Shown in pieces: positions 7,901-9,424 of a DNA stretch of 64,000 bases; position 1 is the first letter of the stretch, and each line of letters begins with the position of its first letter. Position numbers and translations under genes: made by a program. Below the pieces are notes generated by a model. The model did no database searches. It saw only the letters and a program-made list of their open reading frames with translations, and was not told where the DNA came from. Source of the DNA: Magallana gigas (lineage: Eukaryota); contig NC_088859.1 of assembly GCF_963853765.1 (NCBI RefSeq), forward strand, positions 38,378,001-38,442,000. Reading direction: 5' to 3'.

Positions 7901-9424
7901 GCCGTTGGATCGGGCTTTGACAGACCAGAGCTTACGCTGCAGGTATTTTGTTTTCAATGAATAAGTCTCTGATAAATTCACCTTTCTCTTTATATAGTCG
8001 ATTTGCTTTACAGTGTATGTATAAATACATGTGATCCTATTTAACCCATTATAAATTATTTTTGTTTCTTGTACTCTTTTAAAGTTAATTGCCGTTTCAG
8101 AAGTATATAATTTCCAAATTTATATTTTTAGGATCTTAAGATAAGATATTAAATAATCAAGTTTATTTTTGTAAAGATATACATGTATAAACATGTGCTA
8201 ATCATACAATTTATTCATATACACATGTTATTTGATCGTATTTCTAGGCTATACATGACCAAGAGGATGAAGTTGAAATACTGAAGTCCAAGTGTGACAA
8301 AGCGCGAGAGGACCTTGCAAATGCCAAGCTAAAACTGCGAGAACAACTGAATGAAGGCTTAGGTATGCAAACTAAAGAGCAAGCTAAATGAATCAAATTT
8401 ACGTAAAAATTATATTGTACATACTTTATGTTTAATCATTCTATTCTTTTCCATTAGAAACAAATGAAAATCTTCCTGGAATGCAAATTCTTATCAAAGA
8501 ACTGGATGATGTACTTCTTAGAGATGTTGGCGATAAAATCAAAGACTCGGGGAAGTATGTGTACTTGTTTAATCATGAATTAAGTACATAATATAAATGT
8601 AATTGAAAATTGTCATGATTGCATACCGTTACTTACCATGAGTTACCTCTCTTGCTGTAGATGGCCTCTCATTATCGACAGAAGTTCACAAGCAGCTACT
8701 TTCTTGAGGTACAGGGACACAAATTACCTCAATACCTTAAACACGAAGGAAATGGAGCCCAACAAAGTGAGGCTCTCTCTTCTGGGAGCAATCAGGTAAA
8801 TAAGATTTTTGCATGCGTTCATTCAAAATTCTTATGCATGTTCCAACAGTGCAACGTTTTGGTTTATCTTGTATTGTTCTTGAAATATTGTATCTTGTTT
8901 CAACAATTCCCCTTCAGGCTGGTGGTTCTATTCTGGCTGCATTTTTGCGCTGTCAACATTTATTATTTGTTACATAATAAGAAGCATAAGAATTGTGATT
9001 TTGCCTGTAGATTTGGAAAACCACTGGTTCTAGATATGATGGAAGTCGACATGTTTCATACAGTCAGTGACAGATTCGATGAAATTGAAAAAGGTTTAAT
9101 GGACCAAATTATGGACAAAAGTATCATGCAGGAGGAAAAGTAAGTCTACTTGTTTTAGGCCAATTTTTTCACAAGTTTATAGCTGTTACAGTGGTAAATT
9201 TATTAAGCTTTCTGACATTTTTTCATAATCATTTTCTTTTACAATGTTTTTTCTTCAGTTACTTGAAACTGATAAAAGAAGGAGATGGACCAGAATATGA
9301 GAAAAACAAATTCACTTCCTACCGAACTCAAAACTTTAAGTTCTGGATCATCACCAAGAACCCCTACCCCCCAGATTACCTGTTAGACAGGTGTTACACA
9401 ATCAGAATCTATGTGCCAACGTAA
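4925..9424 (+). CDS. IQANK1: IQ motif and ankyrin repeat domain-containing protein 1 (579 aa)
   Basis: 14 phase-consistent exons: 4925-5045, 5652-5857, 6015-6179, 6294-6423, 6634-6758, 6879-6941, 7273-7412, 7583-7637, 7850-7942, 8248-8362, 8458-8554, 8661-8795, 9011-9139, 9259-9424 (1740 nt). IQ motif ([16 protein letters not shown]), charged helix, ankyrin repeats ([43 protein letters not shown]), coiled coil, and C-terminal WPLIID...[12 protein letters not shown]...FWIITK domain. Confidence 0.85.
5347..5498. mobile_element. Palindromic MITE (~150 bp) in IQANK1 intron 1
   Basis: Arms of ~62 bp (TTACTGGCGTGCGACTAGTTCTCGC...GTGACGTCATTTT / AAAATGACGTCAC...GGTCGCACGCCAGTAA) with few mismatches; TA/TTA-TAA flanks. 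Confidence 0.8.

What the first reader, a model, noticed from the sequence alone, without database searches (positions are those of the whole stretch)
8458..9424. IQANK1 C-terminal domain looks like dynein heavy chain AAA5 outside a dynein
Seen: [16 protein letters not shown] ... [15 protein letters not shown] ... [13 protein letters not shown]; the paralog has FPMMIDP ... ALRHGKKLVID ... FGFVIITKN. Established (recalled): axonemal dynein AAA5 (Pfam AAA_9) has the ordered motifs RWPLMIDPQxQANKWI ... LENxIxFGxPVLLEN ... xFRFYITTKLxNP. Motif order and spacing match in both proteins, and no Walker A is present, consistent with nucleotide-free AAA5. Inference: IQANK1 is IQ + ankyrin + coiled coil + a free dynein-AAA5-like module, possibly mimicking or docking onto dynein rings or their assembly factors. 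I am not aware of this being characterised.
Basis: partly seen in the sequence, partly recalled or inferred. Interest (0 to 1): 0.75.

Follow-up and report, generated by a model that had tools for sequence, protein, structure and literature searches.

The report
Dynein AAA5-like domain in oyster IQANK1
The last four exons of an expressed oyster IQANK1 gene encode a catalytically dead, stand-alone copy of the fifth AAA module (large subdomain) of dynein motors; protein databases already flag this automatically, but I found no paper that studies it.

Summary
Window 8458-9424 (+) holds the last four exons of a 579-residue IQANK1 orthologue (CDS 4925-9424). All three introns between these exons, and the one before them, are confirmed by RNA contigs, and two of them also by polyA reads.

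The spliced roughly 175-residue C-terminal domain contains every quoted motif. A near-identical proxy scores 30.9 bits on Pfam AAA_9 (cut-off 27.4). AAA_9 is the only Pfam family hit, in 45 of 48 family members. A profile-profile comparison with the oyster's own dynein AAA5 modules gives 97% probability over 130-143 columns. A family profile against the PDB hits dynein heavy chains almost exclusively, in one stretch per chain. For human dynein-1 that stretch lies in AAA5 by recalled UniProt boundaries.

The AlphaFold model (pLDDT 94) is an AAA+ alpha/beta core. It has no Walker A or B motif and no lid, and it ends just after strand beta5.

The family is old. It occurs in animals, choanoflagellates, a green alga and marine protists, with a weaker lead for oomycetes. 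This genome has two members, lying head to head in this window.

Precomputed Pfam and UniRef names already carry the AAA_9 label. No paper links IQANK1 to dynein. The domain's function is untested; I infer a non-enzymatic docking module.

The parts
4925..9424 (+). Coding region of the IQANK1 orthologue (579 aa, 14 coding exons). It comprises a Lys/Ala/Pro-rich basic tail, an IQ motif, an E/K-rich helix, ankyrin repeats, a coiled coil and the AAA5-like domain.
   Evidence: 5-mer mapping of P0152 onto the window, tblastn, and Pfam Ank/IQ/AAA_9 hits on P0152 and its orthologues.
8458..8554 (+). Exon 11, the N-terminal strand and two helices of the domain ([27 protein letters not shown]). It aligns to the start of AAA_9 (GLPxDxxSxENGIIv).
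   Evidence: Splice joints at 8358/8454 and 8554/8661 in RNA contigs, global hhalign, and the secondary structure of the AF2 model.
8661..8795 (+). Exon 12, holding strand beta1 with the degenerate P-loop ([13 protein letters not shown]), helix alpha1 (TFLRYRDTN, a family signature), beta2 and alpha2 (VRLSLLGAI).
   Evidence: This exon alone gives AAA_9 as the only Pfam hit (E 0.055). It is also the region matched in PDB dynein chains. Joints are shown.
9011..9139 (+). Exon 13, holding RFGKPLVLD (strand beta3, with Asp but no Glu at the Walker B position) and the helices that follow. This is the most conserved exon between the two paralogues (45% identity).
9259..9424 (+). Exon 14, holding the GDGPEY hairpin-like motif, strand beta4 (FKFWIITKN), beta5 (YTIRIYV) and the stop codon. 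The protein ends 3 residues after beta5, so there is no AAA+ lid.
9425..9639 (+). 3' untranslated region (minimum extent).
   Evidence: The RNA contig of run X14 continues to 9639.
2143..2280 (-). Short head-to-head paralogue, exon equivalent to exon 12 (FPMMIDPSEISGRFLQYRE...). It has the same intron phase.
1495..1623 (-). Short paralogue, exon equivalent to exon 13 (HGKKLVIDMMGVD...). It has the same length (129 nt) and the same phase.
705..858 (-). Short paralogue, last exon (…FGFVIITKN…TVRVES, then stop).

Best explanation
The last four exons of this expressed oyster gene encode the C-terminal domain of an IQANK1 orthologue. That domain is a true but very divergent homologue of the large (alpha/beta) subdomain of dynein heavy-chain module AAA5.

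It keeps the AAA+ core (five strands with flanking helices) and several dynein-AAA5 signature motifs: WPLxID-xxGQA, FGxP-hhh[D/E], GDxxxY and FxFxxxTK. It has no P-loop lysine or threonine and no Walker B glutamate. It also has no helical lid, because the protein stops just after strand beta5. It sits alone at the end of a coiled coil, not in a six-module ring.

These points are shown here: the homology, the fold, the loss of catalytic motifs, expression and splicing, and the age of the family.

This part is inferred. The domain cannot hydrolyse ATP or build a canonical ring, so it most likely works as a rigid, nucleotide-free docking surface. A dimerising coiled coil would position it, the ankyrin repeats would add binding capacity, and the IQ motif would give calmodulin-type input. 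The complex is probably microtubule- or cilium-associated, because the named hits come only from lineages that build flagella or cilia and because both paralogues carry a MAP-like basic tail.
For: Splicing and expression:
- RNA contigs from 3 runs and polyA raw reads show the GT..AG joints.
- P0152 is 95% identical over the last 174 residues.

Pfam:
- AAA_9 scores 30.9 bits (cut-off 27.4) on the isolated domain of P0152.
- 45 of 48 family members hit AAA_9 at E<=0.01, and no other Pfam family is hit.
- Individual relatives score up to 39 bits.

Profile evidence:
- The family profile against 11 AAA5 modules of this genome gives 97.0-97.6% probability, E 2e-11 to 1e-10, over 130-143 columns and AAA_9 positions ~1-149.
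- The window's own spliced peptide scores 22.1 bits on the oyster dynein AAA5 HMM.
- The family HMM on oyster dynein AAA5 scores far above 1100 shuffles.
- In the PDB profile search, 20 of 22 hits are dynein heavy chains, each with one matched stretch. In human DYNC1H1 it is 3574-3640, best E 3e-4.

Structure:
- The AF2 model has pLDDT 94 and pTM 0.88.
- The top 43 Foldseek PDB hits are dyneins.
- VIA-align gives Z 9.2-9.7 with 19-24% identity at dynein AAA5.
- In the ESM Atlas shape search, the nearest clusters outside the family are all AAA_9-bearing dynein fragments.
- Human IQANK1 (A8MXQ7, residues 400-557) is the top AFDB hit, TM 0.84.

Motifs and distribution:
- No Walker A or B motif is present.
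- The family occurs in animals, choanoflagellates, a volvocine alga and MMETSP protists, with leads for oomycetes and ciliates.
Against: - Whole-protein Pfam scores for the oyster orthologues fall just under the AAA_9 cut-off (23.8-24.6 bits). A six-frame AAA_9 scan of the genome did not flag this locus.
- Pairwise similarity to any single dynein is weak.
- By shape alone, dynein AAA1 scores as well as AAA5, and other clade members (Mdn1, MoxR, Vps4) follow at Z 7-8.
- Nothing here shows a binding partner, a location in the cell or a link to cilia. No RFX X-box was found in the window.
- The absence of the family from cilia-less lineages was not tested rigorously.
Confidence: 0.8

Rival explanations
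1. The domain is a generic, decayed AAA+ large subdomain. AAA_9 is only the nearest Pfam model because both have lost their P-loop, so there is no specific common origin with dynein AAA5.
For: VIA-align scores dynein AAA1 (Z 9.8 and 8.2) as high as AAA5, and many AAA+ proteins reach Z 7-8. The whole-protein AAA_9 score of the oyster orthologue is sub-threshold.
Against: AAA_9 is the only Pfam family hit in 45 of 48 members. The other dynein AAA models and the general AAA models are not hit. Each matched dynein chain in the PDB has a single matched stretch. In human DYNC1H1 it is 3574-3640, inside AAA5 by recalled UniProt boundaries. The shared motifs go beyond the core and include WPLxIDxxGQA and GDxxxY-FxFxxxTK. 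Identity is 19-24% at AAA5 against 11% at AAA1. The nearest non-family Atlas clusters all carry AAA_9.
Confidence: 0.07
2. The free AAA5-like domain acts on dynein itself. It could act as a decoy for the linker, which docks on a conserved AAA5 site after the power stroke. It could also bind surfaces that normally pack against AAA5 (the AAA4 lid, AAA6). Either way IQANK1 would be a calmodulin-regulated dynein modulator or assembly factor.
For: Homology to AAA5 is real. Linker docking on AAA5 (yeast K3438, R3445, F3446) controls ATPase activity and microtubule release (PMC6659695; PMC4359366). The GDxxxY motif and a hydrophobic position in the helix after beta3 are conserved between the family and dynein. 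The named hits come only from flagellated or ciliated lineages.
Against: There is no direct evidence of any contact. I could not map the docking residues onto the model. The family-specific invariant residues ([10 protein letters not shown]70, R78, K81, D86 in domain numbering) are not dynein residues, which suggests a new partner surface. No IQANK1-family protein matched by sequence any non-dynein chain of the solved axoneme structures.
Confidence: 0.12
3. The domain is an oligomerisation module. The long and short paralogues, transcribed divergently with about 1.4 kb between their start codons, would pair through their AAA5-like domains.
For: AAA+ large domains usually pack side by side. The head-to-head pair is also adjacent in the protobranch Solemya (locus tags 006891 and 006892). 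Only these two members exist in the genome.
Against: No lid is present, and canonical AAA+ packing needs one. The complex prediction gave no verdict either way. Many taxa are seen with only one form.
Confidence: 0.1
4. The domain is still an enzyme that binds nucleotide through a non-canonical site.
For: An invariant Lys (K81, in GKP) and Asp residues (D39, D86) are conserved across the family.
Against: No GxxxxGK[ST] motif sits at the P-loop position, and no Walker B Glu is present. K81 sits at the start of strand beta3, away from the P-loop. Dynein AAA5 is itself regarded as nucleotide-free (established knowledge).
Confidence: 0.03

Closest known systems
Dynein heavy chain AAA5 large subdomain (Pfam PF12781, AAA_9)
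   Same: It has the same alpha/beta AAA+ core and the same order of motifs: WPLxIDxxGQA at a dead P-loop, FGxP-hhh[D/E] on beta3, GDxxxY, FxFxxxTK on beta4, then beta5. Profile-profile probability is 97%, and Pfam scores exceed the cut-off for several members.
   Different: It covers only AAA_9 positions ~1-149 of 222. It has no lid or buttress, no neighbouring AAA modules, no linker and no stalk. There are about 21 extra residues between beta3 and beta4. It has its own invariant residues ([10 protein letters not shown]70, R78, K81). It sits in a 579-aa scaffold protein or a short protein of about 220 aa.
Human IQANK1 (UniProt A8MXQ7) and mouse Iqank1 (Q3TYL0)
   Same: These are orthologues. 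They are the top structural hits for the oyster domain (TM 0.84, 39% identity, residues 400-557), and relatives share the IQ + ankyrin + coiled-coil + C-terminal domain layout.
   Different: The protein function is uncharacterised in any species. In the human literature the locus is discussed mainly as the lncRNA FAM83H-AS1 (PMC12757458).
Dynein/midasin/MoxR-type AAA+ modules (Mdn1/Rea1, NorQ, CbbQ)
   Same: These are the next-best structural neighbours (Z 7.6-8.0).
   Different: Those are active ATPases with Walker motifs and lids that form rings. There is no sequence-level match.

Membership tests
Pfam AAA_9 (dynein AAA5) | Score at or above the curated cut-off (27.4 bits) on PF12781 | tested here: inconclusive
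   The isolated domain of P0152 (95% identical to the window protein) scores 30.9 bits. Whole P0152 scores 24.6 bits. Window exon 12 alone scores 13 bits. Relatives P0009, P0016 and P0044 score 39, 29.0 and 28.9 bits.
Pfam AAA_9 (dynein AAA5) | Colinear AAA5 motifs across the alpha/beta core | tested here: met
   hhalign against 11 AAA5 modules of this genome gives 97% probability over 130-143 columns.
Pfam AAA_9 (dynein AAA5) | Full-length domain, including the helices after beta5 (GLEDQLL...) | tested here: not met
   The alignment stops at AAA_9 position ~145-149 of 222, and the protein ends 3 residues after beta5.
Dynein heavy chain | Six concatenated AAA modules with linker, stalk and microtubule-binding domain | tested here: not met
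   The protein is 579 aa, and Pfam finds only IQ, Ank and AAA_9.
AAA+ ATPases (active) | Walker A motif GxxxxGK[ST] after beta1 | tested here: not met
   The sequence there is IDRSSQAA. No family member has the motif at that position.
AAA+ ATPases (active) | Walker B motif hhhhDE | tested here: not met
   The sequence is LVLDMM, with Asp kept and no Glu.
AAA+ ATPases (active) | C-terminal helical lid subdomain | tested here: not met
   The stop codon follows beta5.
AAA+ fold | Five-stranded alpha/beta core | tested here: met
   The AF2 model has pLDDT 94 and strands at 34-38, 54-57, 82-86, 148-153 and 166-172. VIA-align gives Z 7-10 to many AAA+ chains.
IQANK1 orthologues | IQ + ankyrin repeats + coiled coil + conserved C-terminal domain, and best match to human IQANK1 | tested here: met
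   The IQ motif is weak in the oyster proxy but is detected in relatives.

The most novel reading that the evidence does not exclude
The IQANK1 family may be a free-living dynein AAA5 module dating to the last eukaryotic common ancestor, still talking to dynein. Its conserved face would mimic the AAA5 linker-docking or ring-packing surface. IQANK1 and its short basic-tail paralogue would then act as calmodulin-gated brakes, or as assembly or positioning factors, for axonemal or cytoplasmic dynein.
Probability: 0.1. Interest if true: 0.85.

Novelty: new variant of a known kind. Interest (0 to 1): 0.5.

Why it matters
Dynein AAA5 is normally thought of only as one sector of the motor ring, a nucleotide-free sector that takes part in linker docking and in stalk/buttress communication. 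A conserved, expressed, stand-alone copy of its large subdomain is a ready-made handle on what that surface does. It is found from a green alga to humans in a protein with calcium-sensor and scaffold features.

It also gives a first structural hypothesis for IQANK1. That gene has been treated in the human literature almost only as the non-coding RNA FAM83H-AS1.

The value is tempered, because automatic Pfam and UniRef annotation already shows the AAA_9 label. The gap is one of attention and experiment, not of detection.

Tried and rejected
- **Exon-level searches:** the Atlas search with exon 12 alone gave no usable hit. Exons 11, 13 and 14 alone gave no Pfam hit.
- **Pairwise comparisons:** phmmer against single dynein exons gave only short, weak matches. 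hhalign of the family against one dynein sequence aligned only 20 columns at 52% probability. A profile was needed on both sides.
- **Six-frame AAA_9 scan of the genome:** it did not list this locus, because exon-sized pieces score too low.
- **P0125:** this 5820-aa hit in the representative search is a repetitive artefact, not a dynein.
- **Complex prediction:** the AAA5-like domains of the adjacent long and short Solemya genes were folded together, and the result was no verdict. This is not evidence either way.
- **RFX X-box scan of the window:** this would have hinted at ciliary regulation, but it found none.
- **Spliced window peptide:** it has no reference, so it was used only inside scripts. 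Database tools were given the 95%-identical P0152 instead.

Full report
**What is at the coordinates**

The window is G000:C7:38378001-38442000 of a 564-Mb genome. The RNA holders and closest protein relatives are oysters.

Reading 8300-9600 shows four short open segments with canonical splice sites. Joined as 8458-8554, 8661-8795, 9011-9139 and 9259-9424, they give a 174-residue peptide that ends at a TAA stop.

RNA contigs from three runs skip exactly 8555-8660, 8796-9010 and 9140-9258, all with GT..AG ends. PolyA raw reads show the last two joints. One contig carries a 3' UTR to at least 9639.

The peptide is 166/174 identical to P0152. P0152 is a 579-aa protein predicted from transcript-sized assemblies, and it maps onto 14 exons from 4925 to 9424. 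I used P0152 as the referable proxy for the window's protein in the database tools.

**The paralogue**

A second gene lies on the minus strand. Its last three exons (2280-2143, 1623-1495, 858-705) carry FPMMIDP, HGKKLVID and FGFVIITKN. They have the same intron phases, and one exon has an identical length of 129 nt.

A search of the whole genome with the family profile finds only these two genes. My results agree that short forms of about 200-290 aa are widespread. In Solemya, the long and short genes carry adjacent locus tags.

**Is the domain related to dynein AAA5?**

- **Pfam.** Exon 12 alone gives AAA_9 as its only hit (E 0.055). The isolated domain of P0152 scores 30.9 bits against a cut-off of 27.4. 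Among 48 diverse family members scanned one by one, 45 hit AAA_9 at E<=0.01 and no other Pfam family appears. Whole proteins score 13-39 bits, three of them above the cut-off.
- **Profile against solved structures.** A profile of the 48 domains (A4) gives 22 hits at E<=10. Twenty of them are dynein heavy chains, each with a single matched stretch. In human DYNC1H1 it is residues 3574-3640, best E 3e-4. By UniProt boundaries that I recall, this lies in AAA5. So each six-module chain is matched in only one stretch. I placed that stretch in AAA5 only for human dynein-1.
- **Profile against profile.** I stitched the AAA5 modules of 11 dynein genes of this same genome from the exon hits. hhalign of A4 against this set gives 97.0-97.6% probability, E 1e-10 to 2e-11, over 130-143 columns. 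The match covers almost the whole IQANK1 domain and AAA_9 positions ~1-149.
- **The window's own peptide.** It scores 22.1 bits on the oyster dynein AAA5 HMM.
- **Shuffle control.** The family HMM scores 12-21 bits on 8 of 9 oyster dynein AAA5 sequences, against a maximum of 9.7 bits in 1100 shuffles.

**Structure**

With A4 as the alignment, AlphaFold2 gives pLDDT 94.1 and pTM 0.88. The model has strands at 34-38 (WPLII), 54-57, 82-86 (PLVLD), 148-153 (KFWIIT) and 166-172 (YTIRIYV). It also has an N-terminal strand and two helices, and a helical stretch between beta3 and beta4.

- The top 43 Foldseek hits in the PDB are dynein heavy chains.
- VIA-align gives Z 9.7, 9.7 and 9.2 at AAA5 of human and yeast dynein, with 19-24% identity. 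It also gives Z 9.8 and 8.2 at AAA1 of yeast dynein-1 and human dynein-2, with 11% identity. Mdn1, NorQ, CbbQ and Vps4 follow at Z 7-8.
- In the ESM Atlas shape search, the family's own clusters come first. The next rows are all dynein fragments in which 91-100% of members carry AAA_9 (TM 0.54-0.56).
- In AlphaFold DB Swiss-Prot, the best hits are human and mouse IQANK1 (TM 0.84 and 0.70), which confirms orthology.

The fold therefore says 'AAA+ large subdomain of the dynein type'. The sequence profiles say 'AAA5'.

**What is kept and what is lost**

Kept, and shared with dynein AAA5:
- W34-P35 and the invariant D39;
- G80 of FGxP;
- D130 and Y134 of GDxxxY;
- F147 of FxFxxxTK.

Lost:
- the Walker A motif (the sequence is IDRSSQAA; the single regex hit in the alignment lies at GAIRFGKP-like GSLRYGKT, not at the P-loop);
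- the Walker B glutamate (LVLDMM);
- the whole lid.

New:
- about 21 extra residues between beta3 and beta4;
- family-specific conserved residues: [10 protein letters not shown]70, R78, the invariant K81, D86 and L107.

**Distribution and what is already known**

Named orthologues come from the following groups:
- molluscs, annelids, nemerteans, brachiopods, flatworms, echinoderms, hemichordates, cephalochordates and tunicates;
- vertebrates, including primates;
- cnidarians and sponges;
- the choanoflagellates Salpingoeca and Choanoeca;
- the volvocine alga Astrephomene;
- MMETSP protist transcripts.

Atlas clusters with Oomycota and Ciliophora as the commonest phylum are leads. The oomycete cluster is also matched by shape, TM 0.77.

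All named hits belong to lineages that build flagella or cilia. Absence elsewhere was not tested, so this is suggestive only.

The precomputed Pfam column lists PF12781 for most orthologues. UniRef calls the Pinctada, Elysia and Capitella proteins 'Dynein heavy chain ATP-binding dynein motor region domain-containing protein'. The similarity is therefore visible in databases.

In the papers searched, 37 mention IQANK1. None of them also mentions dynein or ciliated cells, and the three that mention cilia do so only incidentally. One review notes that the locus was formerly FAM83H-AS1 and is discussed as a lncRNA (PMC12757458).

**How it probably works**

Shown: the domain is an expressed, conserved, lid-less AAA+ core without Walker motifs, homologous to dynein AAA5L.

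Inferred: it is a non-enzymatic docking module at the tip of a coiled coil, in a scaffold that also carries ankyrin repeats, an IQ motif and a Lys/Ala/Pro-rich tail. Both paralogues begin MPPK.

In dynein, AAA5 offers the post-power-stroke docking site for the linker (yeast K3438, R3445, F3446; PMC6659695; PMC4359366). A free copy could in principle mimic that site. This is the most interesting open reading, but nothing here tests it.

A complex prediction for the two paralogous domains gave no verdict. No X-box was found in the window.

**Verdict**

The observation and the structural interpretation are correct. The finding is a real, ancient, non-motor use of a dynein module. Automatic annotation has detected it, but I found no experimental or published analysis of it.

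Noticed in passing
window 705-3545 (- strand): A short head-to-head paralogue with a basic MPPK... tail fused directly to the AAA5-like domain. Its start codon lies about 1.4 kb from the IQANK1 start at 4925, so a shared bidirectional promoter is likely.
   Followed up: partly
G000:C8:46.78-47.36 Mb (outside the window): At least ten tandem copies of the same set of AAA_9 exons, with near-identical bit scores (about 73.6, 65, 45 and 24.4). They are spaced about 30-100 kb apart, and one copy is inverted. This looks like a tandemly amplified dynein heavy-chain gene or gene fragment in the oyster genome.
   Followed up: no
G000:C9:30318474-30377346 and C10:9646298-9647762 (outside the window): Three tandem, divergent AAA_9 matches (34-39 bits, profile positions 104-176, with weaker matches at 7-52) and one further weak locus. 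These could be divergent dyneins or other AAA5-like genes. The IQANK1 family profile does not hit them.
   Followed up: no
PDB 9y6s chain 8J, residues 649-822: A non-dynein protein of the Leishmania 96-nm axonemal repeat has a C-terminal AAA+ domain that matches the model at Z 7.6 (10% identity). It has no sequence-level match to the family. Its identity was not checked.
   Followed up: no
window 1440-1490 (- strand): A (GA)n microsatellite of about 45 bases directly after the donor site of the paralogue's penultimate exon.
   Followed up: no
window 26331-26463: A run of 133 N (a gap or masked stretch). It was left untouched.
   Followed up: no
window 8712, 8745, 9325: Single-base differences between the RNA contigs and the window within the domain's exons (C>T, G>A, A>G). 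Together with the 8 amino-acid differences to P0152, these look like allelic or strain variation.
   Followed up: no
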